64,000 nucleotides of DNA from Isurus oxyrinchus (lineage: Eukaryota). Made by a program: the position numbers and the translations under genes. The notes beneath the pieces were generated by a model. It was not told the DNA's origin and did no database searches. It was given only the letters and a program-made list of their open reading frames with translations. Shown here piece after piece: positions 13,407 through 49,317 of this stretch; positions within the stretch are counted from its first letter, which is position 1; each line of letters starts with the position of its first letter. The stretch is taken from contig JANJGN010000052.1 in assembly GCA_026770705.1 (NCBI GenBank), positions 2,790,001-2,854,000 of the forward strand, in the 5' to 3' direction.

Positions 13407-13690
13407 AGAGATAGGGAGGGTTACAGGGGCTGGAGGAGGTTACAGGTATAGGGAGGGGTGTAGGGGTTGAAGGTGGTTACAGAGATGGGGAGGGTTGTGG
13501 GGGTTGAAGGTGGTTACAGAGATGGGGAGGGTTGTGGGGGTTGGAGGTGGTTACAGATATAGGGAGGGGTGTAGGGGTTGAAGGTGGTTACAGAGATGGG
13601 GAGGATTGTAGAGGCAGGTGGAGGCTGCCTTAGGGAGGGTTGTAGGGGCTGGAGGAAAGGGAGAGAGAGAGGAGGTTACAGATATAGGGA
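13407..13690 (-). repeat. 37-bp minisatellite (CTCTGTAACCTCCTCCAGCCCCTACAACCCTCCCTAT)
   Basis: Tandem copies visible. Confidence 0.9.
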
Positions 13691-15410: not shown

Positions 15411-16379
15411 AATAGAAACTTACCTGTCAGAAGCCAGTTTATGTTGATGTGAGTCTGAGTCGATGACTGAACCCAGTTGGTGACTTGTTCCATACAAAGC
15501 AAGAACGTTCATGCCCTTCAATGTTCCTGGATAAACCATGAACAAAGCTGGTGACAGACAGTCTCCACATGGTAAACACTGACCGATCAACACATGACAT
15601 GGCTGTTAACCCCTAAACCTCAGCGTAAATCAGTTCCCCCTCGAGGCCCCTTGTCCGAAATAAAAGCAACGCACACAATTTGTAAAATAGTAAGTGTCTG
15701 GCAGGAAGGAGGAGCAATGAGAGGAGTAAGGGGTTAGGGGGCGTGCGCTTCACCTGATTTGCCGACATAAGAACCAGCCCCTATGTTTTTGCTATGTTGT
15801 GTTGCGTCAATATGAACACATATTTGCACAAGGTGAAGGGCGTTGCGGAGGGACTGATAGTTCTCGGCGCCAGACAGTCAATGTCCCAGTGACCTTACTG
15901 CTGGTCCCAGGCCAGTGGGACAGGGAACATCGACACTGCAATATCCAGAAATGGGTGCGATACCACACAGCTACCCACCCGCGGCTGTCCCCTTCAAGTG
16001 TTTCAGGTATAAGAGCAGGAAGCTCCTCTAGTTACAAACCAAAGCATCAAAGCAGAGCCAGAAGATCAGAAGAGACAGGCAGAGATGGGAAGCTCCCAGA
16101 TGAAATGGCGACTTGTCTTGTTCACTCTGACTTTGCTGCTCTCCCTGCAGCTGAGTCACTTCTTCTCCTTGTCGAGGTTAAGCTAAGAGATGTCCCTCTG
16201 GGTGAGGTGTTTCTTGCACATGACTCTACGTCTACCACCCAGATAGACTGGTCACTTCCGCAGTTTGATATTATTATGTTCGTGCCTTTAATATTGTCGC
16301 CCTCTATGAATTTAACATCATTTCCTTCTGTCATTTCCCCTGAAATTCTCATTCTTGTTTTCAATCCCTCCTCAGCCAC

Positions 16380-16680
16380 TCCCTATCTCTGTAACCTCCT
16401 CCAGCCCGTACAACCCTCCCTATCTCTGTAAACTCCTCCAGCCCCTACACCCCTCCCTATCTCTGTAACCTCCTCCAGCCCCTACAACCCTCCCTATCTC
16501 TGTAACCTCCTCCAGCCCCTACAACCCTCCCTATCTCTGTAACCTCCTCCAGGCCTTACAACCCTCCCTATCTCTGTAACTTCCTACAGCCCTTACAACC
16601 CTCCCTTTCTCTGTAACCTCCTACAGCCTCTACAGCCCTCCCTATCTCTGTAACCTCCTCCAGCCCCGACAACCCTACCT
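16380..16680 (+). repeat. 37-bp minisatellite in intron 1 of the hepcidin duplicate
   Basis: Tandem copies visible. Confidence 0.9.
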
Positions 16681-16739
16681 AAATCACTGGTCTGAGTCTC
16701 ACTCCAGGGAATTCAGTCCCATAATGTAGATCAACGCTC

Positions 16740-17297
16740 CGTGCTGAGGGAGTGCTGCACTCTCAGAGGGTCAGTAGTGTGGAAGTGTTGCACTATTGGA
16801 GGGACAGTACTGAGGGAGTGCTATACTGTCGGAGGTCAGTACTGAGGGAGTGCTGCTGTGTCGAAGAGTTAGTACTGAAATAGAGCTGCACTGACGGAGG
16901 GACAGTACTGAGGGTGCGCAGTACTATCGAAGGGTTAATACTAAGGGAGTGCTGCAGTGTCAAAGGGTTAGTACTGAGGGAGCGCAACAATGTTGAATGA
17001 GACATTAAACTGAGTCCCCCGTCTGCCCTCTCGGGCGGGTGTGAAAGATCCCACAGCCACTATTTGGAGGAAGAGCAGGGGGAGTTCTCCCCGGTGTCCT
17101 GGGACCAATATTTATCCCTCACCCAACATCACCAAAAACAGATGATCTAGGCCATGATCACATTGCTATTTGTGGGATCTTGCTGTGCACAAATCAGCTG
17201 CCACATTTCCTACAGTGTGAGTGCACTTCAAAAACCTCCTTCAGTGGCTGTGAAATGCTTTGGGATGTGGTGAAAGGCGTTAGAGAAATGCAAGTCT
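16740..17297 (+). mobile_element. DeuSINE (SacSINE1/AmnSINE1-like) with internal 33-bp tandem expansion
   Basis: CAGTACTGAGGGAGTGCTGC..GAGACATTAAAC..AGATCCCACAGCCACTATTT..TGAAAGGCGTTAGAGAAATGCAAGTC. Family assignment is from recall of the consensus, not from a search. Confidence 0.75.
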
Positions 17298-18199
17298 GTC
17301 CTCCTCCCCCTCTCTCTCTCCTGTACCTCTCTCTCTCTCTCTCCCTCTCCCTCAATCCTCCTCTCACTTTCTCCCTGATAAATTCTTTCTTTTTGCAGGT
17401 TGACACTGCTTTAGGTTCTTCGACGATTGAGAAATCTGTGGATTCCCCGGACACGGTAGGTGGAAATTCATTCCTTATTTTAAGGTTTCTCCCTGCTCGT
17501 TTCTTCCACAGAAAGTTTTCTGATTTCAAGCTGATTTCAGTGGCAGTCTGTCTCGGTTATACTCAGGAGGCATGTTTGAAATCGAGCCCCCCCCCCCTTT
17601 TTTTGCAAAGCTGGGAAGAGACAATTCCAAGGAAGTGAACATATCCCCACAGGAATTTTAAATGTAACCCACGCCGGGAATAGTGAGAGGGAGACTGATC
17701 CAGCCTGGGAGTGAGTTAAAGAGAGGCTGGGAGTCGAGAGTCGGAGAGAGGGATGGAATGGGGGAGGGAGGGATTGGAAGAGAGAGACAGAGAGTGGGAC
17801 GGGGAGGGGTGAAAGGGAAAGAACATAGGTGGGAGAGAGTGACAGAGGGAGAAATTAAAGAAGAGATGCAGAGTGAGGGAAAGTGAAAAGGGAAGAGAGA
17901 TTGTCCAAGAGAGAGAAATTAACAGGGAAGGGAGAGTTACAGAGTGAGCGAAAGGTACAAAAATAGTGTGAGAGAGAGGGAGAGATACTGAGTGGGAGAA
18001 TGAGACAGGGAGAGAGAGAGAGAGAGAGACAGGAAAAGGGAGAGAGGAGAGAAAGATTGGGAGAGAGGGCAATTGAGAGGAAGAGTAGGAGAGAGAGAGA
18101 CAGGGAGAGGAGGAGTGGATGAGAGGAAGAGAGAGAGATATGGAGCAGGAGAACACCTCCTCCGGTCCCGATGTTCCTCCAAAATCTCTGACATGACTC

Positions 18200-21417: not shown

Positions 21418-22343
21418 CTAACAGACAGAGAATGGATCCTTTTAGAGAAATATAACGTGAAGCATCAGTTCAAATAGAAATCACAGTCCCACAAGAGAAA
21501 GCACTTTTACAAGGATGATATCAGAACTGAGAGGTTACAATGATCATTTTAGAATTGTCTCTTTTTACACTTGTTGAATCTCTGTCACTCAGATTAATAC
21601 ACTCTCACTCAGTGACCCTTGATTTGACCAGACTGGGTGAGGGTGGAGGAACAGCTCACAGCTCGGGGAGAACAGACTCAGCATTTGGAAAAGGATATAG
21701 AGACACTGGAGAGGGTGGTAAAAAGCTTCACAAGGATGATCTCAGCAATGTGAGGCTTTACCTATCAGGAGAGGATGTACAGGCTGGGTCTCTGTTCTCT
21801 TGAACAGAGAAGGTTGAAGGGTGACCTCATTTGATCTTTCAAGTAGTGAAAGGTTTTGATCGAGTAGACATGGAACAAATGAACAAAACCAGAGGCTGAC
21901 AATATAAGATCCTCACTAATAACTCCAATGGGGAATTCAGGAGAAACTTCTTTACCCAGAGAGTGGAGAGAATGTGTGCTTCAAGAATCACTTCATTGCC
22001 TGTGAATCGATTAAGGATCGTCCTGATGTGGTGAAAGGCGCTATAGGAATGCAAGTCATTCTGTTGTCAATTTGTGGGAATTTAAAACAAGATTAGAGAG
22101 CTTGATAAGATTGGATAACCTGATAACATTGATGGACACACTCAATCTATTTAATCATTGATATTAAAGTGAGTATTAGAGGTTGCTTTAGGACTGAACT
22201 GGAAGCTATCAGCAGGTTATTGAGAATCAGACAGTGTGTTACAATAAGCTTTGTTTTGTGTTAATATGTAAACGTCACAGTTTGTGTTATTTCCCATTGA
22301 GTGTTGGATGTGAATTGTTGAGTAATTATAACACAGCACTTAC

Positions 22344-22712
22344 CAGAAATGTGAAGCCGGGTTACAGGGTAATAGTTGTAGTTATTTGTACTTCCAAATT
22401 CTATTCTGAAAAAATAAGATCCTGCATCTTCCCGTCTGATGTTGTTTATAATCAGGGAACAGTCGCCATCTTTCAGGTCTCCAGACAGCTGGGTCCGATG
22501 GCGGAACCTTGGTAACTCGTGACTGTGATCCTTGGAGTGAAAGGCAAAGGGATTGTCGAATTTGTGTTTCTCGTTATTAAACCAGATTCCGACTCGTGGT
22601 TGGCTTTCCAAATGTGCTGGATAACTGTAATGACACGGAATCTGTACACACGAACCTTCCTGCGCTGTCACCTCTTGTGGAGTGTCACCTTTCCACTCTT
22701 GTGACAGTCCAA
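22344..22712 (-). CDS. Siglec-like gene B1, exon 2: V-set sialic-acid-binding domain
   Basis: 369 nt, phase 1-1, open; GSCVQIPC, GIW, GDCSLII and EDAGSYFFRIE with the essential Arg; canonical splice sites. Confidence 0.92.
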
Positions 22713-23635
22713 CTGGGGAGAGAAATATCTATATTTAATTCTGGATCCTCAATGTCAACTGAATCTTCATTGTCACTTCATTGTCTAAGGAATCTCTTTG
22801 GATCCTCATTGTCTAATGGATTATTTCTGATCCAAACCCCATATTGTTGTATTGTTGATTCCGATGCAGCATTGTAGACTGACTTGTCCCCAAGCTCAGC
22901 ACTGACCCTACTCCAGCAGAGACTGTGAAACACACTAACAAAGCGCCTCTAGCCTGAGCTCTGCCTGTGTCAAGAGCAAAGACAAATATACAAACTGAAT
23001 ATTGACACCTTTACACACAGACAGCTTTACCTTCCTTCTCTCTTTCAGTTATCTTGCTCCCTTATTGAAGTATCTAGCAAGGTGAGAATGGACAGGAAGT
23101 GTGACACTGAACAGCCTGTCTATTCTAGGAGCTGCTATGTTGTCTTCATGGGAAATTCTGACTAAAATCAGCAAAAGACACTAATTTCAGGCCATTGCGG
23201 TCAGACCCTCAGCATCAAGTTAGACTTCATCCCCTGAATTTTGCGTCCGATTTTCTACTCAAACTTTCACCTCCCCAAACCTCCACCCCGACCCCACAAG
23301 TGACTCGATGACCTACACTGGCTCCCAGTCCAGCAATGCCTCGATGTGATTATTTTTACACTTGATTTCCAATCCCTCCATTACTCCGCTACACTCCCTG
23401 TCTCTGTAACCCCCTCCAAACCTACAACCCTCTGTGATCTCTGCACTCCTCCAATTCTGCTGTCAGACAGGGAGTCAGTGTATATCAGTGAGCACAGGGG
23501 TGATGGGTGAATGGGACTTGGTGTGAGTTTGTACACTGGCACACTGCTGAATCGGTTTCCTATCAGAGCTCAATAAGAATGGTCTTATACAAACACTATT
23601 AACCATAAACCTGTCCAAGTTGACGATGATATTAC

Positions 23636-23675: not shown

Positions 23676-24484
23676 CGTCCACTCTCAGGTATTTCATTCG
23701 CTCTCAAACTGTGATAGAGAAAGGAGTTAATGAGACCTCACCTCTTGTCCGACAGCTCTCGAGAGATCAGAACTGCTTTTAGACAATGTCTTCACAGACC
23801 TAATTTGACTCTCTGTGGGATGATAGGTGCTCTGTAGAGAGTTACAAGGCTTTAAGGAAGAAAAACAACGATGAACTTGCATTTCTTTAGCACCTTTCAC
23901 CACCTCAGGATGTCCCAAAGCTCATGTCTCTGCACTTCCCTCATCCCTTGAGCTAGAAAGATGTTCTGTACAACAGACTTGAGCCTCACACCCAGATCTC
24001 AATAATCAGTAGAAATCTTTCAAAGGCATCAATCATTGGAATCTGTCTTTATAAAGTCACAACATCAACAAAGGACGGTGTTGGTGGTGGAAGTGAATTC
24101 CAATCATTCCGTTACTTACCCAGGACCTGTCCGACTGCTCGCCTGGGGTGGAACTGCCCACACGCTCTGCTTGGGCTGAATGACCTCTTCCTGTGCTGCT
24201 CCCTCTGTGTATTTAATTAGAAAGGGTTGATGTGTCTCTGTGAGACAAAATGAGGAAGTCAGATCAAAGTGACAGAGCAGCTGATGTTTTGAGTTTTTTG
24301 AAGCTGTTAACCCTTTGCGTTCTGGACTTGTGATGATATTTCTGCTCAAAAGTGGAAAGTCATTGACCAGGAATTTCTCCTGTGGGTCACTGGGTTTCGA
24401 ACCCTCTCTCACTCTCTGAGTGGATGGTCACCTGTTCGAGATTCATTTGGCAAAATTCAGGCTGGCAAATCAGATCAGCACTCA

Positions 24485-25130
24485 GTGTCAGGACTGAGAG
24501 TCCTGCACAATCGGAGGGTCAGTACTGAGAGAGAGCTGCACTGTTGGAGGGTGAGTATTGAGGGAGTGCTGCATAGTCAGAGGGTCAGTACTGAGGGAGT
24601 GCTGCAAGGTCAGAGGGTCAGTGCTAAGAGAGAACTGCACTGTCAGAGGGTCAGTACAGAGGGAGTGCTGCACAATCGGAGCGTCAGTACTGAAGGAGTG
24701 CTGCACTGTCAGAGGGTCAGTACTGAGGGAGTACTGCACTGTTGGAGGGTCAGTACTGAGGGACTGTTGCACTGTGAGAGGGTCAGTACAGAGGTAGAGC
24801 TGCACTGTCAGAGGGTCAGTACTGAGGGAGTGCTGCACTGTCAGAGGGTCAGTACTGAGACAGAGCTGCACTGTCAGATGGTCAGTACTGAGGGAGTGTT
24901 GCACTGTGGGAGGGTCAGTACTGAGAGAGTGCTGCACAGTCGGAGGGTCAGTACTGAGGGAGTGCTGCACAATCGGAGGGTCAGTACTGAGGGAGTGCTG
25001 CACGGTCGGAGGGTCAGTACTGAGGGAGAGCTGCACTTTCGGAGGGTCAGTACTGAGGGAGTGCTGCACTGCTGGAGGGTCAGTACCGAGGGAATGCTGC
25101 ACTGTCGCAGGCTCAGTACCGAGGGAATGT
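24485..25130 (+). repeat. 33-bp minisatellite (CAGTACTGAGGGAGTGCTGCACTGTCAGAGGGT)
   Basis: About 19 tandem copies; the source of the repetitive ORFs here. Confidence 0.95.
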
Positions 25131-32480: not shown

Positions 32481-32614
32481 CCAAGCAGAGCGTGTGGGCA
32501 GTTCCTCTCCAGGCGAGCAGTCGGACAGGTCCTGGGTAAGTAACAGATCGATTGAAAATCACGGGGGGAGTTCTGAGGGCTCCTAATCCATTGTCCTGTC
32601 TTCTAAATCAGCAC

Positions 32615-32890
32615 CTTAATACTGACCCTTCAACAGTGCCGCACTCCCTCAGTACTGATCCTCCAACAGTGCAGCACTCCCTGATTAATGTCCCTCTGAC
32701 AGTGCAGCACTCCCTCAGTACTGACCCTCCAACAGTGCAGCACTCCCTGATTAATGTCCCTCTGACAGTGCAGCACTCCCTCAGTACTGACCCTCAAACA
32801 GTGGAGATCTCCCTCAGTACTGACCTTACAATAGTGCAACACCCCCTCAGTAATGACCATCCGACAGTGCAGCACTTGCTCAGTACTGAC
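32615..32890 (-). repeat. 33-bp minisatellite
   Basis: Tandem copies visible. Confidence 0.88.
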
Positions 32891-33688
32891 ACTGGGGAGT
32901 TTCAATCCACTCTGTGGGGCAGACGTCCCCTGAATGGTGTCTTGAATCCCACAACATTCTGACCCCCTGAATTTGGCTGTGAAACCCACTGACCCACAGG
33001 AGAAACTCCTGGTCAATGACTGTCCACCTGTGAGCAGAAATATCAACACAGGGTCAGGACACAAAGGGTTAACAGTTCACCAACATCTCAAAACATGAGC
33101 TGCTCTGTCACTTTGATCCAACTTCCTCATTTTTTCACACAGTGACACATTAACCCTTTCTAATTAAATACACAGAGGGAGCAGCACAGGAAGAGGTCAT
33201 TCAGCCCAAGCAGAGCGTGTGGGCAGTTCCTCCCCAGGCGAGCAGTCGGACAGGTCCTGGGTAAGTAACAGAACGATTGGAATTCACTTCCACAACCAAC
33301 ACCGTCCTTTGTTGATGTTGTGACTTTATAAAGACAGATTCCAATGATTGATGCCTTTGAAAGATTTCTACTGATTATTGAGATCTGCGTCTGAGGTTCA
33401 AGTCTGTTGTACAGAACATCTTTCTTGCTCAAGGGATGAGGGAAGTGCAGAGACATGAGCTTTGGGATGCCCTGAGGTGGTGAAAGGTGCTATAGAAATG
33501 CAAATCCTTCATTGTTTGTCTTTCTTAAAGCCTTGTAACTCTCTGCAGAGCACCTATCATCCCACAGAGAATCAAATTAGTCTGTGAAGACATTGTCTAA
33601 AAGCAGTTCTGATCTCTCGAAAGGTGCTGGACAAGAGGTGAGGTCTCATTAACTCCTTTCTCTTTCACAGCTTGAGAGTGAGAAGTGG

Positions 33689-34452: not shown

Positions 34453-34826
34453 TTGGACTGTCACAAGAGTGGAAAGGTGACACTCCACGAGAGGTGACAG
34501 CGCAGGAAGGTTCGTGTGTACAGATTCCATGTCATTACAGTTACTTATCAAATTTCGTAGGGAGATCACGTGCGGAATCTGGTTGAAAGGAATAGATGGG
34601 AACCCACAGCCTAAATGGTCAATAGCCTTTCACTCCGAGGGTCACAATCACAGGGATCAAAGATTCCGCCATCATACCCGGCTGTCTGGAGACCTGAAAG
34701 ATGGCGAGTGTTCCCTGATTATAAACAACATCAGACGGGAAGATGCAGGACCTTATTTTTTCAGAATAGAATTTGACAGCAGGAATAGTTACAGCTACTA
34801 TCCTGTAACCCAGCTTCACGTTTCTG
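34453..34826 (+). pseudogene. Siglec-like gene B2, V-set exon with -1 frameshift at ~34571
   Basis: Split over ORFs 34404-34586 and 34514-34906; retains DAGPYFFRIE; canonical AG/GT. Confidence 0.9.
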
Positions 34827-35349
34827 GTAAGTGCTGTGTTATAATTACTCAACAATTCACATCCAACACTCAGTGGGAAATAACACAAACTGTGACGTTT
34901 ACATAATAACACAAAACACAGCTTATTATAACACACTGTCTGATTCTCAATAACCTGGTGATAGCTTTCAGTTCAGTCCTAAAGCAACCTCTAAAAATCA
35001 CTTTAATATCAATGATGAAAAGCATTAACTGTACCGACATCTTTCATTCTACATCAGCACTCCCTCAGCGCTGACCCTCTGACAGTGCAGCCCGTTCTCA
35101 GTATCCACATTCTCAGGCCACTCAAAGTGCTTCACAGTCGATAGAAGTTAATTGATCTTTATATGATTATTGCTGAATGAAGAGACAAGCTGTCTAAACT
35201 TCTCATATCGCAAACAGCATTCTCCACGGCAACACCTCCACCTATCAGAGACCACTTGCCAACCAATCAGCACTGTCTTTCCATTAAGTATAAATTGTTG
35301 TTCACTTTCTGTTGGTAATCGTGCGAACGGGGTTCTTGATTCCTGCCAT

Positions 35350-35502
35350 GACATCTGAATGTCCAAATGAACAGAAGAAGTTCCAACAATGAGCTGTGGT
35401 TGCTGATTCCTCACGTTACATCCAGGGACACTGGAGACTATCAGTGTGTGGCAGAGAATGAACATGGAGCAGTGGAGGGGTTCATAACCATTACTGTGGA
35501 TT
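35350..35502 (+). pseudogene. 3' half of an Ig C2/I-set exon of B2 (..LWLLIPHVTSRDTGDYQCVAENEHGAVEGFITITVD)
   Basis: DxGxYxC motif; phase-1 donor GTGAGT at 35503; 5' half and acceptor missing. Confidence 0.82.
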
Positions 35503-37163
35503 GTGAGTGTACACAGACATCAACATCTCTCTCAGATTCGAATACTACACAAACACCCTCAAACGTACAGACCTAAATAGACACGTGCAGACACACATAT
35601 ATGACCACACACAAAGACACACTCACAAACAAACACACTAGCACAAGACTCCCTCATGGGTTACCTGACCTCCCTCAGTACTGCACTGGAGCGTGGGCTG
35701 AATTCTGGGATTTGTGTTCCCATTCATATTTATAGAAGAATATGGAAATTACTCATACAAACACTCAGATGCATAGAGGCACTCATAGATACTCTCTGCT
35801 TCTCCAACTCTCTCTCTCCCTTTAAGGAGCTACCTGAAACCTAACCCGTTGACGAATAACTAGTCCCAACTCCTCTTTATCTGATTCTGTGATTTTTTTG
35901 TGAATCTGAGAGTAAGAGAGAGGTGGAGAGGTTTAGTAAGAGAATTCCTGCTGATGAAAAGCTTACATCCTGTTCTCACTATTTCCGTGCCCATTATGTC
36001 CAAAGCCCCTGTTTATAGTGATGACTGCCTATGTAAACGTCACACTGTAGTTACAGCCTCCCACCAGTGGTGGCATTGTAGCACTTAATCCTTGTGTTTC
36101 CCAGCTTTTCAAGCAAATCTACTTCCCAGTTTGCTCCACAAGCTGTGAGTTCATCGGAATTCAATTATTTCTCAAACGGTAGATTTGATGTCATTTTATT
36201 GAAAACTTCCTCAGCGCCTCCCTGAAGGGTTTACACTCTCTGGGAAGCAGGAATAGGCTGGATGTTGGGGAGTTCATCTTTTCCCAGAGAGCAGTGATCC
36301 TCGGGAATGTGCTGTCAGTGGGTGTGGTGGTTGCTGTCTCTCTGTCACCTTCAAGAGGGATCTGGAGTGGTTACTGACTGGGGGAGAGATCATGGAAGCG
36401 GAGAATGATACAGCACAGGAGGAGGCCATTCAGCCCATTGTGCCTGTGCCAGGTCTTTCAATGTTCTATCCAATCAGATCCACTAACCACCACTCCACTT
36501 TGCCCCCATCTTCCTCCTTCAAGTGTTTATCCAATTTCCCTTTTGAAAGTTCCTATTGAATCTTCTTCCACCGCCCTTTCAGGCAGCACCTTCCAGATCA
36601 CAACAACTCGCTCTGTCAAAACAAATTCTCCTCATCTCCCCCTCCGGTTCATCAATCTGTGTCCCTCTGGTTACCGACCCTCCTGCCCCTTAAATACATT
36701 GATACTGTTCACATCACACACTCCCTGTGGGAGCGAGTTCCACATTCTCCCCTCTCTCTGGGTAAAGATTAGAACTGTTTATTAAGCGGGGGGTGTAAGT
36801 CCGTGGGGGAGTCCATCTCGATCCTCCCTGATTCGCACACACGTCCGAGATGGATTTCAACTCTGCACTAAACGTTTCCAGAATTTTCTACAGCACAATC
36901 CTGTACACAGTGATGGAGAGAAACATTGGACAGGGAGTCCAACAGCACAATGATCCATTCTCACCAATGTTCCACGCTAAGGGGAAAGTTCCGATTGTCC
37001 ACTCTTAGAGTGTTTACAATGAAAACATTCATTCCACATTGAATCCCAGTGGATGGGTCAATAATACAGCAAATGTTGCAGTGATATGAAGCTTGATTGT
37101 TCAGCCAGAGTGAGAGATTGAAAGCGGAGAGTCAGTGATGATTTCATTCTGTGTGTTCTCTAG

Positions 37164-38020: not shown

Positions 38021-38729
38021 AAAAGCTTATTCTTTCCATCAGCACAAACAGCAATTTCCAAGCGGACTCCCATCAGCAGACAGAGTGCAATGAAACATCG
38101 GCATGCCTGCTTCTTAATGTACGGAGAGAATCCTGGAACGAGAGATTCTCCTTCTTCTCCTCAGCAAGCTGAAACTTTTCCTTATACCTGGTGCTCCCCA
38201 GTCCTGCTGTGTGGACACATCATAACCACGGCATTGTCTGTCTGTGTGCAGCCAACATGGTCGAATAGGAATGAACAGAAATGTGACGTTGCTAAACTCT
38301 GTTCTCTGATTGGAATGTGCTTTCTGAATGCTGCACCTTTTTCATGCTGCGATAGATTGTAAGAAGCATTTGGGTTATGAATAAAATTACATTGATTAAC
38401 TCAAGTGATTAAAATGTTCAGGCTGTTCTGTAGATATTTAAAGATTAAAATTCTTGTTTTGCTGCAAAATACTTGGCTCAAAGACATTACTTCATGTTGT
38501 CACGTTTTCCAATCAGATGAATTCCTCTGTCCATCTTTATAATAGAAATTTCCAATGTAAACATGTCACATTGTAGCTGCACAAACTTGCCAGTGGCTGG
38601 TGTGATATCAAAGCTGTCTTGCTGTCGAGAAACAGCGAGAAATATTCCTGTTGTGTGCATGAACTTCATGTTAGCATGAGACACAGGCATCAGATGCAAT
38701 TTTGTGCAATTTGTACAATGTTCTTTAGA

Positions 38730-39015
38730 CAGCGCAGCACTCCCTCAGTACTGACCCTCCAACAGCGCAGCACTCCCTCAGTTCAGACCCTCCTACAGTG
38801 CAGCACTCCTTCAGATCAGACCCTCCGACAATGCAGCACTCCCTCAGTTCAAACCATCCGACAGTGCAGCACTCCCTCAGTTCAGACCCTCCGACTGTGC
38901 AGCACTCCCTCAGTTCAAACCCTCAGACAGTGCAGCACTCCCTCAGTTCAGACCCTCCGACAGTGCAGCACTCCCTCAGTACTGAACCTCCGACAGTGCC
39001 GCACTACCTCAGTAC
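38730..39015 (-). repeat. 33-bp minisatellite
   Basis: Tandem copies visible. Confidence 0.88.
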
Positions 39016-40261
39016 TTCTCCGCCGATGCTGCCAGACCTGCTGAGTTTTCCCAGGTATTTCTGTTTCTGTTTCTGTTTTGAATTTCCAGCATCTGCAGTT
39101 GTTTTGATTTTAGTGCTGGGCAGTTCCTCAGCAAGGATTCGGGCCACAAAACATTGCGAGTGCTGTGGGTCTGCGCCACGATTTAGAGAGCTGTGCTTGG
39201 CACGCCTATTCTAGGCCCAGTCCAGTGTGGTGGGGACAGCCTGGCAGTCCTGGGTTGGTGGTGCCCAGCATGGTGTGCAGGACGTGGTCAGTCGCTCACA
39301 CACGTCGGTCCTGGGGGTGGGTGGCTTGATACTAGGCCGCAGGTGGCACAATCCCAGTCAGGGGAGGCAACTGCAGCCTGTCAGTGGGGAGCAGGTAATA
39401 TAGAGGGTAGGGGTGGGGGTGGGAATCGAGGGGGGCCGGTGGTCTCTGTAAGTCACAGTACAATGGGCCTCTAGTTGGAGAGAGGTCAGGTCTACATGGG
39501 GCATTGGGATGTCAACATCAGACAGTCTAGGGAGGAGGACTGGGATGTCAACCCCGAACACAATAAGATCAAGGATTAGAGAGGAAGGGAGGAGACTGAT
39601 TGGAAGGAGGGGAATGTGCACATTATGCTCCTCCAGCACGATGGGAGGGACTGTGATGGTTACGGGGGTGGGGGGGGGTGAAGTGGGAGGGGATAGACGC
39701 TTACCTGGTGGTATTGCCTCAGCCTCACCCTTTTTCAAGCTGATCCAATGTCGCAGTTGAAGAATAAGCTACAAAACAAATTGGCAGGGGAGGTCTCCCA
39801 GGGCCTGTGGGAGACATCACCCACTGCATCTTTGGCCTGTTTGAAGGGGCACCCGAACAATTCCGGCTTTTCCAAATGATGAGGAAGACACAGCTGCACC
39901 CCGAGTCCCCTACTGGGGATCCAGAAGGTTGCAATAGCGCTGCGAGGGACTCATGGGCTCCACAGTGACTCCCTAATTAGCGACTGGAAGGTTTATGTTC
40001 ATTTATCTTTATTATCCGTTCATATTGAGCAATGGAGCTCCTGATCTGACACCTTTCTGTACCTCGTCCAATGCTTCTGTTATCAGGACTTCCACATCGA
40101 TGTGAAAGAGCCATGATGATAGCAGACAGTCGCACAATGGGAATGGCACTAGGCCAGTGATCCAGAGGCCCAGGTGAATGCTTTGGAGGTACGGGTTCAA
40201 ATCCCACCACGGCAGCTGGAGGAATTTAGATTCGATTAATCAATAAATTTAATTGATTGAT

Positions 40262-42475: not shown

Positions 42476-44324
42476 GACATCTGGAATGCGAAGCTAGTCT
42501 CAGTAATGGTGACCATGAAACTAAGGCCAATTGTTACAAAAACCCATCTGGGTCACTAATGCCCTTTGGGGAAGGAAACCTGCCGTCCTTACCCATTCTG
42601 GCCTACGTGTGACTCCTGACCCACAGCAATGTGGTTGACTCTTAACTGGCCCCTGAAATGGCCGAGCAAGCCACTGAGTTATATCAAAACCCGCCACAGA
42701 CCAGTCAAACCAGGCGAACTGCAGCACTTCGAAAAGGCAGCTCAGCACCCCCTTCTCAAGGGCTCAGTCAGGAACAGGTAACAAACGCTGTCCACATCCC
42801 GTGAAAGAATTTTGGTAAAAAGGTAGCCGTGTATCACCACCCACGGCCAGCGCCAACCCCCCCACCCCTACCTGATTGCACCAGTTTCAGATTACACCAG
42901 GTCAATGAACGGATAGAAACTCAAACCAATGAGATGAGCACAGAGCAGGATCAAGCCAGAGAGAGTTGGTGGGAAGAATTGGGAAAGCAACAAAAAAGGC
43001 AGAGCGGACACTAACACTATAACAAAGTAAAGACCAGAGGAGGAAGGAAGCAAGTGTGAAGAGGAATTGAGAGTAGAGCTGGTAGGCTGCTTGTCGAAGC
43101 CAAGGAACCTCCATAGGGCACATCCACAGTGCTGTTGGGGAGGGTGATACATGATTTTGACCCAGGATCATCAAGTGTTGCACTGGCAGAGCCTTTAAAG
43201 TAAAGGAACCTTTACTACCCGTGCACCCCCCCGCCCTACAAAGCTGTTGACCTGCTGAGTCCACCTGTACAGGCAACCTCCAGACAGTTGGCTACAGAGG
43301 CCATTGCAGCTGCTGAATATGACTTCCATTTTCAAACCCTTCATGAATGCAAGGATGGAGAATTCAGCAGGAATATTCCTGCACATCCTGTGGCAGATCC
43401 TGTAAATAAAAGGGACCTTCACTCACTCCCCAAAGCTGCTGACCTGCTGATTCACATCTACAGGCAACCTCCAAATAGTCAACTAGAGAAGACAACGCAG
43501 CTGCTGAATGTGACTCCTAGTTTTAAACCCTTCACTCTGGAAAGAAGGAATCCAGAGCAATGGCCTCAGTATGATTCTTCACAGAAACTGATTTTAAATC
43601 TCATGTCTAAGTATTATTTTTCCTTTGCTTACATTTTAATCCTTGCACCTGATGGCTTTATCGCTTCAACTTAAATAACTTTCAGCAGGAGCCAGGTTCA
43701 AATTGAATGGACAAGCTGGCTTGGGGGGCCAAAAGGCCTACTCCTGCTTCTGTTTATTTATGTTGGTGTTGTTATGTAGTGGAACTAGAGAGGTTATAGC
43801 AGTTATGAGAACATTAAGCAAACAGCAGCAAGAATTGAACACCTACGTTGTGGTTTATGAAAAGGTTTTCAACCTGGTCAACTGGTAAAATCTGTTGAAA
43901 GTGGGCTATCATGGCGTGTGCCCTTTGTGAGATATTTGTAACAACGTTCTCGATGTCGGAACAGCTTGCATTGAACAAAGCTGATCTTTACCCAGAACTT
44001 CAGAGGAAGGGGGGACAATTGTTCCCTGGTGTGGGGGGCATGGTGGGGGGGGAGGGTGAGGGAGAGACAAGTAGCCTGAAATACCAAGCCAGACACTTTG
44101 TGAAGACACAAGTTGTTTATTCATTTTTTTTCACAAATCATAATCTTTACAATTAAAGTCCCGACAAGATGATGGTGAATCATGAACACATTGTCGGGGT
44201 CAATCTGTGCCCGGGAGCATAAAGCAGCAAAATCAGGAGCCCGCTTTACATCACTCTGAATTTTAACTATCATTAACCCCAGTAACATCCATTCAAATGA
44301 CTTAGTCATAAGATTCCTCACACA

Positions 44325-44655
44325 TTCACTTGCACACTCACACACCCACACCCACACAGACACACTGACACACTCACTCATTCACATTGACACACACTGA
44401 CACAGTCACACACACCCACACAGACACACTGACACACTCACTCATTCACATTGACACACACTGACACAGTCACACACACACACACACACACACACGCTGA
44501 CACAATCACACACATTCACATTGACACGCACTAACAGTCACACATACACACACACACGCTGACACAATCACACACATTCACATTGACACACACATATTGA
44601 CAGTCACACACACACACACACACACACGCTCATAAAGACAGACACAAACACAGTC
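44325..44655 (+). repeat. (CA)n-rich degenerate microsatellite
   Basis: Visible. Confidence 0.85.
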
Positions 44656-44958
44656 ACGTGAGGTGAATAGTGTCGATGTATTTAAGGGGAAGCTGGATAA
44701 ACACACGAGGGAGAAATGAATAGAAGGATATGGTGATGGGGTGAGATGGAGAAGGGGTGGGCGGAGACTCGTGTGGAGCAGAAACTCCAGCATGGAACAG
44801 ATGGGCCGAATGGCTCCTTTCCCTGCTGTAAAACGCAGGTAAAGTTTCAGTTGGAATTAATGAACAGGGCCTGTGTGAAATAGATTGCTAAGCAGTAGAT
44901 AAGGAGGGGAGAGGCTGTGGCATGGTGCAGGATGACCTTGCGTGAATGAGGCCAGGGT

Positions 44959-45075
44959 CTAATATCTACAGCAGAGACCACAAGTCTCATTTGGTTCTCT
45001 CCAATTACAGCAGTTACAGCAGAATCTGCAGAGCTGCTGTCTGTCCATTCTCTTCTGGCGCTGCAGCAAGGAGCC
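44959..45075 (-). CDS. HAMP: Hepcidin exon 3: GSLLQRQKR-MDRQQLCRFCCNCCNWREPNETCGLCCRY*
   Basis: cctgcttttccAG acceptor, phase 0; RxKR furin site; C-x2-CC-x-CC-xn-CG-x-CC hepcidin Cys pattern; TAG stop. Confidence 0.95.
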   Translation of the reverse strand, partial: GSLLQRQKRMDRQQLCRFCCNCCNWREPNETCGLCCRY

Positions 45076-45149
45076 CTGGAAAAGCAGGAGGACAATAGGT
45101 GAGAACATTCCTGAAAGAAAGAAGGCATCATTTCAATCAGGCGCGTCAT

Positions 45150-45770
45150 TTGAAGGAGGATGGCGCATTTCTATAGCGCCTTTCCCCTCCTCGGGATGGC
45201 CCAAAGTGTTCCACAGCTGAAGGAAGGACTTTTTCTGAAGTGAGCTCACCGCTGTAATGTAGGAAACGCAGCAGGCAATTCACGCACAGCAAGATCCCAC
45301 AAACAGAAATGTGATAATGGCCCCGATTTTCAGTTTTTTACCAATGTCAGTTGAGGGATAAATGTTTGCCCCAGGAAAGCAGACATAACTGCATCCCATC
45401 CAGCCCCCACCACACCCTCCACACATACCCCCAACTCCTGACGCACTTCATTTAAATTGTGGCCATGGAATCCTCTACATCCATCTGAGAGGGCAGATGT
45501 TGTCTCAGTTTAACATCTCATCTGAAAGACAGCGCATTCAACAGTGCAGCACCCCCTCAGTACTGACCCTCCGACTGTGCAGCACTCCCTCAGTACTGAC
45601 CGTCTGACAATGCAGCACCCCCTCAGTACTGACCCTCCGACTGTGCAGTCCCCCGCCGGTACTGACCTTCTGACAATGCAGCACTCCAAGACTGACTGTC
45701 TGACAATGCAGCACCCCCTCAGTACTGACCCTCCGACTCTCCTGCCCCCCCGCTGGTACTGACCCTCCGA
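45150..45770 (-). mobile_element. DeuSINE with 33-bp tandem expansion, in hepcidin intron 2
   Basis: Same SINE body as 16740-17297. Confidence 0.75.
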
Positions 45771-46050
45771 CAAATCGGTAATTTCTCAATTATGCCTGGT
45801 GGTCCTTTTAACTCAGAGCTGAGAGTTGCAGAGAATCGAGCAGACACCCTGAACTGACACTTGCAGTGCAAGTACTGGGAGCGCGCTGGTCATTATCTTG
45901 CTGCTGTCTGTGGGATCTTACTGTGCGCCAATGGCTGATTCTTTTCCCACAGTACATCAGTGACCTCACATGAAAGAAAAAAAGCACTTGATTGTCTGTG
46001 AAACAGTTTGGGACGTCCTGATGTGTTGGAAGGCGCTAGAGAAATGCAAG

Positions 46051-46199
46051 AGTTGACGTTTCGAGTCCTCATGACCCTTCTGAGGACTCGAAACGTCAAC
46101 TCTTTTCTTCTCCGCCGATGCTGCCAGACCTGCTGAGTTTTTTCAGGTAATTCTGTTTTTGTTTTGGCTTTCCAGCATCTGCAGTTTTCTTTGTTTTTA
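46051..46199. mobile_element. Short Penelope-derived insertion with inverted 5' end and 14-bp TSD
   Basis: TAGAGAAATGCAAG at 46037-46050 and 46200-46213; perfect 24-bp inverted repeat 46048-46071/46081-46104. Confidence 0.75.
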
Positions 46200-47469
46200 T
46201 AGAGAAATGCAAGTCCTCTTTGTCTTTCACTCGATCCTCTAAGGTGTCTGTTGATTAACCAGCCTCTCGGTGTTTGATGTAGGCCTGGTTATAAACAGGT
46301 AGAAGGATCAAATATCAAAAATGCTTTGGCTGACAGTCAAACCGATTGTGCATTCGGAGAGATTAGATACGGTCTGCACACAATGACTCCAGTCTCTGGC
46401 ACTGACTGCCGCCTGGGGTCTCCCTTCCACATAACACTCACAACTTGCATTTACACAGCGCCTCTGACATTGCAAAATGTCCCAGCCCACATTACCGGAG
46501 CGTAAATCAGAGAGAAGTCTAACACTGAGTCACATATGGAGATATTAGGGATAGGTGACCAAAAGCTTGGTCAAAGATGTCAGTTTTTAAGGAGCGTCTT
46601 AAAGGAGAGAGAGAGAGAGAGGCAGAGAGGTTAAGGGAGGGTATTCCGGAGCTCAGGGCCCCAGGCAGCTGAAGGCACGGCCACCAATGGTGGAGCGATG
46701 GGAATCAGGGGGACCCGGGAGATGCAGTAATGTCAGAGATTTTGGAGGAACATCGGGACCGGAGGAGGTGTTCTCCTGCTCCATATCTCTCTCTCTCTTC
46801 CTCTCTTCCACTCCTCCTCTCCCTGTCTCTCTCTCTCCTACTCTTCCGCTCAATTGCCCTCTCTCCCAATCTTTCTCTCCTCTCTCCCTTTTCCTGTCTC
46901 TCTCCCTCTCTCTCCCCTGTCTCCTTCTCCCACTCTGTATCTCTCCCTCTCTCTCACACTATTTTTGTACCTTTCGCTCACTCTGTAACTCTCCCTTCCC
47001 TGTTAATTTCTCTCTCTTGGACAATCTCTCTTCCCTTTTCACTTTCCCTCACTCTGCATCTCTTCTTTAATTTCTCCCTCTGTCACTCTCTCCCACCTAT
47101 TTTCTTTCCCTTTCACCCCTCCCCGTCCCACTCTCTGTCTCTCTCTTCCAATCCCTCCCTCCCCCATTCCATCCCTCTCTCCGACTCTCGACTCCCAGCC
47201 TCTCTTTAACCCACTCCCAGGCTGGATCAGTCTCCCTCTCACTATTCCCGGCGTGGGTTACATTTAAAATTCCTGTGGGGATATGTTCACTTCCTTGGAA
47301 TTGCCTCTTCCCAGCTTTGCAAAAAAATTGAGGGGGGGCTCGATTTCAAACATGCCTCCTGAGTATAACCGAGACAGACTGCCACTGAAATCAGCTTGAA
47401 ATCAGAAAACTTTCTGTGGAAGAAACGAGCAGGGAGAAACCTTAAAATAAGGAATGAATTTCCACCTAC

Positions 47470-47526
47470 CGTGTCCGGGGAATCCACAGATTTCTCAATC
47501 GTCGAAGAACCTAAAGCAGTGTCAAC
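47470..47526 (-). CDS. HAMP: Hepcidin exon 2 (VDTALGSSTIEKSVDSPDT), propeptide
   Basis: 57 nt, phase 0-0; ttctttttgcAG acceptor and ACG|GTAGGT donor. Confidence 0.88.
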
Positions 47527-48209
47527 CTGCAAAAAGAAAGAATTTATCAGGGAGAAAGTGAGAGGAGGATTGAGGGAGAGGGAGAGAGAGAGAGAGAGGT
47601 ACAGGAGAGAGAGGGGGAGGAGGACAGACTTGCATTTCTCTAACGCCTTTCACCACATCCCAAAGCATTTCACAGCCACTGAAGGATGTTTTTGAAGTGC
47701 ACTCACACTGTAGGAAATGTGGCAGCTGATTTGTGCACAGCAAGATCCCACAAATAGCAATGTGATCATGGCCTAGATCATCTGTTTTTGGTGATGTTGG
47801 TTGAGGGATAAATATTGGTCCCAGGACACCGGGGAGAACACCCCCTGCTCTTCCTCCAAATAGTGGCTGTGGGATCTTTCACACCCGCCCGAGAGGGCAG
47901 ACTGGGGACTCAGTTTAATGTCTCATTCAACATTGATGTGCTCCCTCAGTACTAACCCTTTGACACTGCAGCACTCCCTCAGTACTGACCCTCCGACAGT
48001 GCAACACTTCCACAGTACTGACCCTGTAACAATGCAGCACTTCCTCAGTACTGACTTCCGACAGTATAGCACTCACTCAGTACTGTCCCTCCAATACTGC
48101 AACACTTCCACACTACTGACCCTCTGAGAGTGCAGCACTCCCTCAGCACGGAGTGTTGACCTACGTTATGGGACTGAATTCCCTGGAGTGAGACTCAGAC
48201 CAGAGATTT

Positions 48210-48955
48210 AGGTAGGGTTGTTCCGGCTGGAGGAGGTTACAGAGATAGGGAGGGTTGTAGAGGCTGTAGGAGGTAACAGAGATAGGGAGGATTCTAGAGG
48301 CTGTAGGAGGTTACAGAGATAGGGAGGGTTGTAGGGGCTGTAGGAGGTTACAGAGATAGGGAGGTGAGTAGGGGCTGTAGGAGGTTAATGAGATGGGGGG
48401 GTTGTGGGGGCTGGAGGAGGTTACAGAGGTAGGGAGGGTTGTAGAGGCTGGAGGAGGTTACCAAAATAGATACTGTTGTAGGGGCCACAGTAGGTTACAG
48501 AGATAGGGAGAGTTATAGTGTGGAGAGGACGTTATAGAGTTCATGAGCATTGTAGGGGCTGGAGGAGGTTACAGTGATTCTGAGGGTCGTGGGGCCTGGA
48601 GGAGGTTACAGAGATAGGGAGGGTTGTAGGGTCTGGAGGAGGTTACAGAGATAGGGAGGGTTGTAGGGGCTGGAGCAGGTTACAGAGATAGGGAGGGTTG
48701 TAGGGTCTAGAGGAGGTTACAGTGATCATGAGGGTTGTGGGGCCTGGGGGAGGTTACAGAGATAGGTAGGGTTGTAGGGGCTGGAGGAGGTAACAGAGAT
48801 AGGGACAGTTGTAGGGGCTGGAGGAAGTTACAGAGATAGGGAAGGTTGTAGGGGCTGGAGGAGGTTACAGAGATAGGGAGGGTTGTAGGGGCTGGAGGAG
48901 TTTACAGAGATAGGGAGGGTTGTACGGGCTGGAGGAGGTTACAGAGATAGGGAGT
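48210..48955 (-). repeat. 37-bp minisatellite in hepcidin intron 1
   Basis: About 20 copies, versus about 8 in the left arm. Confidence 0.92.
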
Positions 48956-49155
48956 CGCTGAGGAGGGATTGAAAACAAGAATGAGAATTTCAGGGGAAAC
49001 GACAGAAGGAAATGATGTTAAATTCATAGAGGGCGACAATATTAAAGGCACGAACATAATAATATCAACCTGCAGAAGAGACCAGTCTATCTGGGTGATA
49101 GACGTAGAGTCATGTGCAAGAAACACCTCACCCAGAGGGACATCTCTTAGCTTAC

Positions 49156-49248
49156 CCTCGACAAGGAGAAGAAGTGACTCAGCTGCAGGGAGAGCAGCAA
49201 AGTCAGAGTGAACAAGACAAGTCGCCATTTCATCTGGGAGCTTCCCAT
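49156..49248 (-). CDS. HAMP: Hepcidin exon 1 (MGSSQMKWRLVLFTLTLLLSLQLSHFFSLSR), signal peptide
   Basis: 93 nt, phase 0; AGG|GTAAG donor; basic n-region and hydrophobic core; second in-frame ATG at 49233. Confidence 0.9.
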
Positions 49249-49317
49249 CTCTGCCTGTCTCTTCTGATCTTCTGGCTCTGCTTTGATGCTTTGGTTTGTA
49301 ACTAGAGGAGCTTCCTG

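What the first reader, a model, noticed from the sequence alone, without database searches (positions are those of the whole stretch)
44962..45048. Atypical mature hepcidin: no His/Phe N-terminus, doubled loop with an N-glycosylation sequon
Seen: a 29-aa mature peptide starting MDRQQL. It has 8 residues (NWREPNET) between the second CC pair and the CG, including N-E-T, and a net charge of about +1 (4 Arg vs 3 Asp/Glu). Established: iron-regulatory hepcidins begin DTHFP (mammals) or QSHLS (teleost HAMP1). That N-terminus, with His3, is needed for ferroportin binding and forms the ATCUN metal site, and the turn is about 4 residues (HRSK in human). Antimicrobial HAMP2 types are usually more cationic. 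Inference: this peptide fits neither class. It may be a separate shark hepcidin lineage, possibly glycosylated, with a co-evolved ferroportin or a different target.
Basis: partly seen in the sequence, partly recalled or inferred. Interest (0 to 1): 0.85.

Follow-up and report, generated by a model that had tools for sequence, protein, structure and literature searches.

The report
Expressed long-loop shark hepcidin paralogue
This is the last exon of a real, spliced and very strongly transcribed hepcidin gene whose peptide has a hairpin loop twice the usual length and an altered start. It is one copy in a multi-copy family, and the same animal also transcribes a hepcidin with the usual iron-hormone start, so this is a side branch and not a replacement for the hormone.

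Summary
Minus strand 44962-45048 encodes a 29-aa peptide starting MDRQQLC. It has eight Cys in hepcidin order, an RQKR convertase site before it and a TAG stop after it. Its loop has 8 residues (NWREPNET) where human has 4 and sea bass 5, and the loop contains N-E-T. Exon 3 passes Pfam Hepcidin (32.2 bits, cut-off 27).

The gene has three exons: 49248-49156, 47526-47470 and 45075-44959. Both introns are confirmed by GT-AG joints in one run, where exon depth is about 500 times intron depth. Siglec V-set exons flank the gene, as MAG and CD22 flank human HAMP.

- The same run holds a transcript fragment reading ...KR-MSHLSICMYCC, the canonical His3 type. A co-evolved ferroportin is therefore not needed.
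- Another fragment, NKKGTKKT-CGLCCRY*, also has a loop of at least 8 residues but no sequon. The long loop looks like a family trait, and the sequon does not.
- Sea bass Hamp2 carries N-M-S in the same loop.
- Glycosylation, ferroportin binding and antimicrobial activity were not tested.

The scan has noted this same peptide many times on other DNA of this genome, so the gene is multi-copy. The window also holds a truncated inverted duplicate (15625-18198) that lacks exon 3.

The parts
49156..49248 (-). Exon 1: ATG plus 31 codons (MGSSQMKWRLVLFTLTLLLSLQLSHFFSLSR), a signal peptide with a hydrophobic core; the donor is AGG|GTAAGC
   Evidence: Sequence and translation. The joint 47526|49156 with CT..AC ends (GT..AG on the minus strand) is seen in 11 contigs of run X1.
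47470..47526 (-). Exon 2: 19 codons of pro-region (VDTALGSSTIEKSVDSPDT), phase 0 on both sides
   Evidence: Joints on both sides are seen in run X1, and the exon bin depth is 183,904 against about 1,000 in unique intron bins.
44959..45075 (-). Exon 3: end of the pro-region (GSLLQRQKR), the mature peptide and the stop TAG; the acceptor is ttttccag|GGC
   Evidence: Pfam Hepcidin scores 32.2 bits against a cut-off of 27. The joint 45075|47470 is seen in 9 contigs of X1, and the bin depth is 632,240.
45049..45060 (-). R-Q-K-R proprotein-convertase (furin-type) site directly before the mature peptide
   Evidence: Read from the sequence. Cleavage itself is inferred from the R-X-K/R-R rule and was not observed.
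44962..45048 (-). Predicted 29-aa mature peptide with Cys at 7, 10, 11, 13, 14, 23, 26 and 27; by homology the disulfides are C7-C27, C10-C13, C11-C23 and C14-C26
   Evidence: The human disulfide connectivity comes from PMC7915682; its transfer to this peptide is an inference.
44983..45006 (-). Eight-residue hairpin loop N15-W-R-E-P-N-E-T22, including the sequon N20-E21-T22 (44983-44991)
   Evidence: HMMER places a 4-residue gap in bass hepcidin opposite NWRE.
49320..49325 (-). TATA-like TATAAG, 77 nt upstream of the ATG
   Evidence: Motif scan. Depth in run X1 rises in the bin 49279-49400.
49458..49467 (-). GGCGCCAGAC, a BMP-responsive-element-like motif (GGCGCC plus a SMAD AGAC box), 210-219 nt upstream of the ATG
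   Evidence: There are two matches in the window, this one and its duplicate at 15866-15875, against 0.02 expected by chance. Function was not tested.
15625..18198 (+). Truncated inverted duplicate of the same gene. It holds the promoter, exon 1 (16085-16177, identical), a first-intron donor changed from GT to TT (16178-16179), exon 2 (17399-17455, identical) and the start of intron 2. It has no exon 3.
   Evidence: blastn gives 94.8% and 93.5% identity. Coordinates were checked. There is no further colinear match and no second CCxCC motif.

Best explanation
The stretch is the coding part of exon 3 of an intact, three-exon hepcidin-family (HAMP) gene on the minus strand. The gene lies tail-to-tail with a Siglec-like gene.

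Shown here:
- family membership;
- both splice junctions;
- very high transcript level of this sequence type in one run of the same species.

Inferred:
- the 88-aa precursor enters the secretory pathway through the exon-1 signal peptide;
- a furin-type convertase cuts it after RQKR;
- the product is a 29-aa, four-disulfide beta-hairpin whose tip loop has 8 residues instead of 4-5.

This gene is one copy of an amplified, diversifying shark hepcidin family. The same animal also transcribes a copy with a canonical x-S-H-L-S-I-C start. The window peptide keeps only half of the ferroportin-contact patch: Leu6 and Phe9 are kept, while His3 is Arg and the hydrophobic residue 4 is Gln. It is therefore most likely not the principal ferroportin-closing iron hormone. 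It is more likely a side-branch paralogue, functionally comparable to teleost Hamp2: host defence or another extracellular role, perhaps with weak or modulating ferroportin binding.

The long loop would point out of the ferroportin cavity. It is where the copies differ most, so it is more likely a variable surface than a binding requirement. N-glycosylation of N-E-T is possible but unlikely to be a defining feature.
For: Family. Pfam Hepcidin scores above its cut-off. The core CRFCCNCC and the tail CGxCCR(F/Y) are shared with bass hepcidin.

Gene model. Exons have canonical GT-AG borders. In run X1 the joints fall exactly at 45075|47470 and 47526|49156, and exon bins reach 184,000-632,000 against about 700-1,200 in unique intron bins.

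Synteny. Siglec V-set exons lie at 22264-22728(-) and 34481-34903(+). They match Siglec-8, MAG and CD33 at E 1e-16 to 1e-17 and Pfam V-set/Ig_CD22.

Family and paralogues:
- Variant junction contigs differ in the pro-region. One changes Thr to Met at 47471 with depth 13,928, against 2,475 for the window form. Another changes Val to Gly at 47525.
- One loose end reads MSHLSICMYCC and another reads NKKGTKKTCGLCCRY*.
- A truncated duplicate lies in the window.
- Scan notes report the same peptide on many other pieces of this genome. These are leads only.

N-terminus. The active patch of human hepcidin is His3, Phe4, Ile6 and Phe9 (PMC7915682). A close relative's DNA reads MRQQQL instead of MDRQQL, so this end is not under tight constraint.

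Loop. In the ferroportin complex the 'highly variable hepcidin loop' is largely extracellular and the two termini are buried (PMC8235187).
Against: - No function was tested.
- Net charge of about +1 is low for a membrane-active peptide.
- The enormous transcript level and a GGCGCCAGAC motif in the promoter are what one expects of the iron-regulated liver hepcidin.
- Leu6, Cys7, Phe9 and the two-residue C-terminal tail are retained, so ferroportin binding is not excluded.
- The canonical-type transcript rests on a single contig end of 38 letters. Its abundance and its locus are unknown.
- Reads cannot be assigned to this copy rather than to near-identical copies elsewhere.
- The tissue of run X1 is not known to me.
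Confidence: 0.6

Rival explanations
1. This long-loop peptide is itself the shark's iron-regulatory hormone. It binds a ferroportin whose cavity has co-evolved with the R3/Q4 N-terminus.
For: - The transcript level is very high, as for hepatic hepcidin.
- The promoter holds a BMP-RE-like GGCGCCAGAC motif, with 0.02 expected by chance.
- Leu6, Cys7, Phe9 and the C-terminal length are retained.
- The loop would be extracellular and so tolerated.
- Cartilaginous fish ferroportin already has the C326 equivalent, and some species have a second ferroportin (PMC8235187).
Against: - A transcript fragment with the canonical S-H-L-S-I-C start exists in the same run.
- Two of the four patch residues are replaced by polar or charged ones.
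- The N-terminus differs between two close relatives, MDR against MRQ.
- The family is multi-copy, with divergent loops.
Confidence: 0.2
2. The peptide is N-glycosylated on Asn20 in the enlarged loop, which would give a glycopeptide hepcidin with new properties.
For: A sequon N-E-T with Thr and no Pro is present. It sits in a loop that is solvent-exposed in the known complex.
Against: - The sequon is absent from the paralogous NKKGTKKT loop.
- Sea bass Hamp2 has N-M-S in the same loop and is handled in the literature as a plain peptide. From memory, native bass hepcidin had the unglycosylated mass.
- Asn20 is 9 residues from the C-terminus and next to a disulfide Cys. From my own knowledge, oligosaccharyltransferase works poorly in such positions.
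- No paper on a glycosylated hepcidin was found.
Confidence: 0.1
3. This copy is a drifting, functionally irrelevant duplicate on its way to becoming a pseudogene.
For: The locus is in duplication flux. A truncated copy with a broken donor lies 27 kb away. The N-terminus and the loop vary between copies and between relatives.
Against: - All eight Cys, the RQKR site, the signal peptide, all four splice sites, the TATA box and the stop are intact.
- Transcripts with exactly this exon 3 dominate run X1, with depth about 680,000 and no listed variant inside the exon.
Confidence: 0.1

Closest known systems
Teleost Hamp2-type hepcidins (e.g. sea bass Hamp2; bass hepcidin, PDB 1S6W)
   Same: - The core C-R-F-C-C-N-C-C is identical and the tail is C-G-x-C-C-R-(F/Y).
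- Six residues precede Cys1 and lack the Q-S-H-L-S motif.
- The loop contains P-N-x-(S/T).
- Multi-copy genes sit beside one canonical Hamp1-type gene.
- Net charge is low.
   Different: - The loop has 8 residues, not 5.
- The expansion is probably independent, in sharks rather than teleosts. Orthology was not tested.
- No antimicrobial data exist.
- Leu6 is kept, as in Hamp1.
Iron-regulatory hepcidin (human HAMP, DTHFPICIF...; teleost Hamp1, QSHLSLCRW...)
   Same: - Three-exon gene with a furin site.
- Eight Cys in the same order.
- Six residues before Cys1 and two after the last CC.
- Hydrophobic residue 6 and aromatic residue 9.
- Siglec neighbours (MAG and CD22 in human, from my own knowledge).
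- Very high expression.
   Different: - Arg replaces His3, so there is no ATCUN site.
- Gln replaces Phe/Leu4.
- The loop has 8 residues against 4-5.
- The gene is multi-copy.
Canonical-type hepcidin transcript of the same species (fragment ...KR-MSHLSICMYCC)
   Same: The pro-region is similar enough to align at 85% or more, and the Met after the convertase site is the same.
   Different: It has His3, Leu4, Ile6 and Tyr9. Its loop and its locus are unknown, and it is not in this window.

Membership tests
Hepcidin family (Pfam PF06446) | Profile match above the curated cut-off | tested here: met
   Exon 3 scores 32.2 bits against a cut-off of 27, E 1.3e-07.
Hepcidin family (Pfam PF06446) | Eight Cys in the order C-x2-CC-x-CC-loop-C-x2-CC | tested here: met
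   The spacing is identical except for the loop, which has 8 residues instead of 4-5.
Hepcidin family (Pfam PF06446) | Three-exon prepropeptide gene: signal peptide, pro-region, R-X-K/R-R site, and the mature peptide at the C-terminus in the last exon | tested here: met
   Both introns are confirmed by GT-AG joints in run X1. Cleavage itself was not observed.
Hepcidin family (Pfam PF06446) | Conserved neighbourhood (HAMP beside the Siglec genes MAG and CD22, and USF2, in human; from my own knowledge) | tested here: inconclusive
   Siglec-type V-set exons flank the gene. USF2 was not looked for, and one-to-one orthology of the Siglecs was not established.
Iron-regulatory (ferroportin-binding) hepcidin | N-terminal patch of His3, Phe/Leu4, Ile/Leu6 and Phe/Trp9 | tested here: not met
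   The peptide has Arg3, Gln4, Leu6 and Phe9, so two of four residues are kept (the patch is defined in PMC7915682).
Iron-regulatory (ferroportin-binding) hepcidin | ATCUN site (free N-terminus, X-X-His) | tested here: not met
   The start is M-D-R.
Iron-regulatory (ferroportin-binding) hepcidin | Binds ferroportin and triggers its internalisation | not testable with these tools
Iron-regulatory (ferroportin-binding) hepcidin | Transcription driven by BMP/SMAD and IL-6/STAT3 | tested here: inconclusive
   GGCGCCAGAC lies at -219. No TTCNNNGAA site occurs within 950 nt upstream. These are motifs only.
Hamp2-type (host-defence) hepcidin paralogues | Extra, diversifying copies beside a canonical copy | tested here: met
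   Variant and paralogous transcript fragments are seen, and a truncated duplicate lies in the window. Many further copies are reported by scan notes, which I did not check.
Hamp2-type (host-defence) hepcidin paralogues | Antimicrobial activity and induction by infection | not testable with these tools
   This needs peptide assays and challenge experiments.
N-glycosylated secreted peptide | Sequon N-x-S/T (x not Pro) that is conserved and occupied | tested here: inconclusive
   The sequon is present but absent from the paralogous loop NKKGTKKT. Occupancy cannot be tested here.

The most novel reading that the evidence does not exclude
Sharks have amplified hepcidin, together with the neighbouring Siglec genes, into a family. 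In it a doubled, hypervariable hairpin loop (acidic and sequon-bearing in this copy, strongly basic in another) acts as a copy-specific recognition surface on a constant four-disulfide scaffold. Some copies may be glycosylated, or may tune ferroportin rather than close it. That would be a mode of hepcidin diversification not described in bony vertebrates.
Probability: 0.15. Interest if true: 0.7.

Novelty: new variant of a known kind. Interest (0 to 1): 0.42.

Why it matters
Hepcidin and its Cys326-bearing ferroportin first appear in cartilaginous fish (PMC8235187), yet I found no paper that describes a shark hepcidin. An abundantly expressed long-loop form next to a canonical-type form would show that the split into an iron hormone and side copies arose in sharks too, and probably independently of the teleost Hamp1/Hamp2 split. 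It also offers a natural test of how much loop the ferroportin site tolerates. In practice, genome annotators and proteomics databases should expect many near-identical hepcidin copies in sharks. One study found hepcidin in nurse shark plasma but no whale shark orthologue (PMC9207270).

Tried and rejected
**Searches for relatives that gave nothing**
- The search for homologous proteins, with a stop-free 57-aa reference and the region limited to the exon: no candidate.
- The search of protein representatives with the 38-aa exon 3: no hit at E up to 0.001 among 1.84 billion proteins. The query is too short for that library, so this says nothing about novelty.
- As a result, no orthologue set, no phylogeny and no conservation test across chondrichthyans could be made.

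**Structure and complex**
- AlphaFold2 on exon 3 without an alignment gave two helices, mean pLDDT 72.5. This contradicts the known beta-hairpin and was discarded. No fold search was run on it.

**Literature**
- The nurse shark plasma proteome supplement held as text does not mention hepcidin.
- The minihepcidin paper PMC3225996 is not held.
- No held paper prints the peptide motifs.

**Other checks in the window**
- Pfam scans of ten long ORFs gave only sub-threshold or low-complexity hits.
- My first two regular-expression screens for Ig exons found almost nothing. A looser listing then showed the V-set exons.

**Runs of other organisms**
- Runs X5 and X10 covered repeats almost exclusively. 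X5 also had one weak exon 2-exon 3 joint.
- For X11 (organism B DNA), only the indel pair at 45041/45045 was listed inside exon 3. Its other differences were cut from the table, so conservation of the loop and the sequon in organism B remains unknown.

- The spliced 88-aa precursor was not joined or searched as one sequence. Exons were searched apart by reference.

Full report
**Observation**

A TAG stop follows at 44961-44959. R-Q-K-R precedes it at 45060-45049, and before that lies a good acceptor, ttttccag|GGC.

The 38-aa exon passes Pfam Hepcidin (PF06446, 32.2 bits, cut-off 27, E 1.3e-07). Its best solved relative is bass hepcidin 1S6W. The core CRFCCNCC is identical there, and HMMER opens a four-residue gap opposite NWRE. 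This is the only CCxCC motif in the six frames of the window.

**Gene model and expression**

Upstream on the same strand I read two further exons:
- Exon 1 at 49248-49156: 31 codons, a typical signal peptide, donor AGG|GTAAGC, and TATAAG 77 nt before the ATG.
- Exon 2 at 47526-47470: 19 codons, phase 0 on both sides.

Together with exon 3 this makes an 88-aa precursor. Each was handled by reference.

Laying the contigs of four public runs on 44900-49400 gave the following for run X1 (organism A, the best holder):
- A joint at 45075|47470 in 9 contigs and a joint at 47526|49156 in 11 contigs. Both have CT..AC ends, which is GT..AG on the minus strand.
- Exon bins at 632,240, 183,904 and 323,499. 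Unique intron bins lie at about 700-1,200.

The run therefore contains spliced RNA of this gene type at a very high level. I do not know the tissue. The genome holds near-identical copies, so the reads cannot be pinned to this locus.

**Surroundings**

Siglec-type V-set exons lie at 22264-22728 (minus) and 34481-34903 (plus). They carry the YFFRIE motif, hit Pfam V-set and Ig_CD22, and match Siglec-8, MAG, Siglec-5 and CD33 at E 1e-16 to 1e-17. An I-set exon follows at 35352-35573. In human, HAMP lies beside MAG and CD22 (my own knowledge), so the neighbourhood fits a true HAMP locus.

**A family, not a single gene**

Four lines of evidence from my own calls:

1. Junction contigs in X1 come in variants. 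One has Met instead of Thr at the last codon of exon 2 (47471), with depth 13,928 against 2,475 for the window form. Another has Gly for Val at the first codon of exon 2.
2. Two contig ends in X1 leave the window sequence inside exon 3.
 - One matches the pro-region through the ATG at 45048-45046 and continues S-H-L-S-I-C-M-Y-C-C.
 - The other matches from the 3' side up to 44987 and is preceded by N-K-K-G-T-K-K, which gives ...NKKGTKKT-CGLCCRY*.
 - The first is the canonical pattern: compare sea bass Hamp1 Q-S-H-L-S-L-C-R-W-C-C (PMC5665920). It has His3, a hydrophobic residue 4, Ile6 and an aromatic residue 9.
 - The second shows a loop of at least eight non-Cys residues that is strongly basic and has no sequon.
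 - I cannot tell whether the two fragments belong to one transcript.
3. The window holds a second, inverted, truncated copy at 15625-18198, 94-95% identical.
 - Its promoter, 5'UTR, exon 1 (16085-16177) and exon 2 (17399-17455) are identical to the main copy.
 - Its first donor is TT instead of GT.
 - Homology stops in intron 2, and there is no exon 3.
4. DNA of a close relative (organism B, run X11) reads M-R-Q-Q-Q-L where this window reads M-D-R-Q-Q-L.

The scan's own notes report the same 29-aa peptide on many other pieces of this genome. Three of them lie about 0.74, 1.52 and 2.01 Mb before this window on the same piece. Other follow-up agents also report a canonical-type transcript. I treat these as leads. 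They agree with what I saw.

**What it most likely does**

The steps from precursor to a secreted four-disulfide hairpin are inferred from the family. By homology the disulfides are C7-C27, C10-C13, C11-C23 and C14-C26 (human connectivity from PMC7915682).

The active epitope of human hepcidin is its first nine residues, above all His3, Phe4, Ile6 and Phe9 (PMC7915682). Here the equivalents are Arg3, Gln4, Leu6 and Phe9, and there is no X-X-His copper site.

In the ferroportin complex the 'highly variable hepcidin loop' is largely extracellular, while both termini are buried (PMC8235187). A doubled loop is therefore no obstacle to binding. The altered N-terminus is.

A canonical-type copy is expressed in the same animal. 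On that basis, the window peptide is best read as a side-branch paralogue comparable to teleost Hamp2, which does not regulate ferroportin (PMC5665920). It shares with Hamp2 the CRFCCNCC core and a P-N-x-(S/T) loop element. I put this reading at 0.6.

Several points speak for the rival, that this is the iron hormone itself (0.2):
- the huge transcript level;
- the retained Leu6, Cys7 and Phe9;
- a GGCGCCAGAC motif at -219, found twice in the window (here and in the duplicate) against 0.02 expected. It resembles the BMP-responsive element of HAMP promoters (my own knowledge).

**Glycosylation**

The sequon is real but weak evidence:
- With three Asn in the peptide, one N-x-S/T is not unusual by chance.
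- The paralogous long loop lacks it.
- Sea bass Hamp2 has N-M-S in the same loop.
- The Asn lies nine residues from the C-terminus and next to a disulfide Cys.
- I found no paper on a glycosylated hepcidin.

I put this at 0.1.

**Comparison with what is known, and novelty**

The peptide is a member of the hepcidin family by every feature I could test. It fails the N-terminal features of the iron-regulatory class. Its eight-residue loop exceeds the human (4) and sea bass (5) loops.

No held paper describes shark hepcidins or prints these motifs. The literature says only two relevant things:
- Ferroportin's Cys326 first appears in cartilaginous fish, and some species have a second ferroportin (PMC8235187).
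- Hepcidin was detected in nurse shark plasma without a whale shark orthologue in the database (PMC9207270).

I rate it a new variant of a known kind.

**Limits**

I could not retrieve any other chondrichthyan hepcidin. The single-sequence AlphaFold model was helical and was discarded.

Noticed in passing
window 15625-18198 (+): Truncated inverted duplicate of the hepcidin gene. Promoter, 5'UTR, exon 1 (16085-16177) and exon 2 (17399-17455) are identical to the main copy, while the introns are 94-95% identical. The first donor is TT instead of GT (16178-16179). Exon 3 is absent. About 200 identical bases around exon 1, where roughly 12 differences would be expected, suggest constraint or gene conversion.
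   Followed up: yes
window 49458-49467 (-) and 15866-15875 (+): GGCGCCAGAC (a BMP-responsive-element-like GGCGCC plus a SMAD AGAC box) lies about 215 nt upstream of the hepcidin ATG, and again in the duplicate. That is 2 matches against 0.02 expected by chance. It is a possible iron/BMP control element.
   Followed up: partly
window 46200-46284 (-): A minor alternative splice in run X1 joins exon 2 to an acceptor at 46284 inside intron 2 (one contig, depth 844). It reads AYIKHREAG and then a stop, so the product would lack the mature peptide.
   Followed up: partly
window 47471 and 47525: Spliced contigs in run X1 carry pro-region variants. One changes Thr to Met at the last codon of exon 2 and has a higher depth than the window form. 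Another changes Val to Gly at the first codon of exon 2. They probably come from other copies or alleles.
   Followed up: partly
window 22264-22728 (-) and 34481-34903 (+); 35352-35573 (+): Two inverted Siglec-type V-set exons carry the sialic-acid Arg motif YFFRIE (best matches Siglec-8, MAG and CD33), and an I-set exon follows. The layout is hepcidin copy, then Siglec, then Siglec in the opposite direction, then hepcidin: a large inverted duplication.
   Followed up: partly
window 48200-48960 (intron 1), 49698-49920, 13403-13656 and 16379-16681: A tandem array with a period of about 37 bp (..cctcctccagcccctacaaccctccctatctctgtaa..) fills much of hepcidin intron 1. It recurs upstream of the gene and in the duplicate.
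   Followed up: no
window 44300-44640: A long CA-rich compound microsatellite lies about 300 nt past the hepcidin stop. No AATAAA or ATTAAA was found within 660 nt downstream of the stop, so the poly(A) site is not defined.
   Followed up: no
window 45500-45780, 47920-48150, 24480-25130, 32610-32900, 38720-39030, 55000-55210, 57280-57690: A dispersed repeat built of units like 'cagtactgaccctccgac' occurs in both hepcidin introns and across the window. Its copies gave huge depths in all four runs, including other organisms.
   Followed up: no
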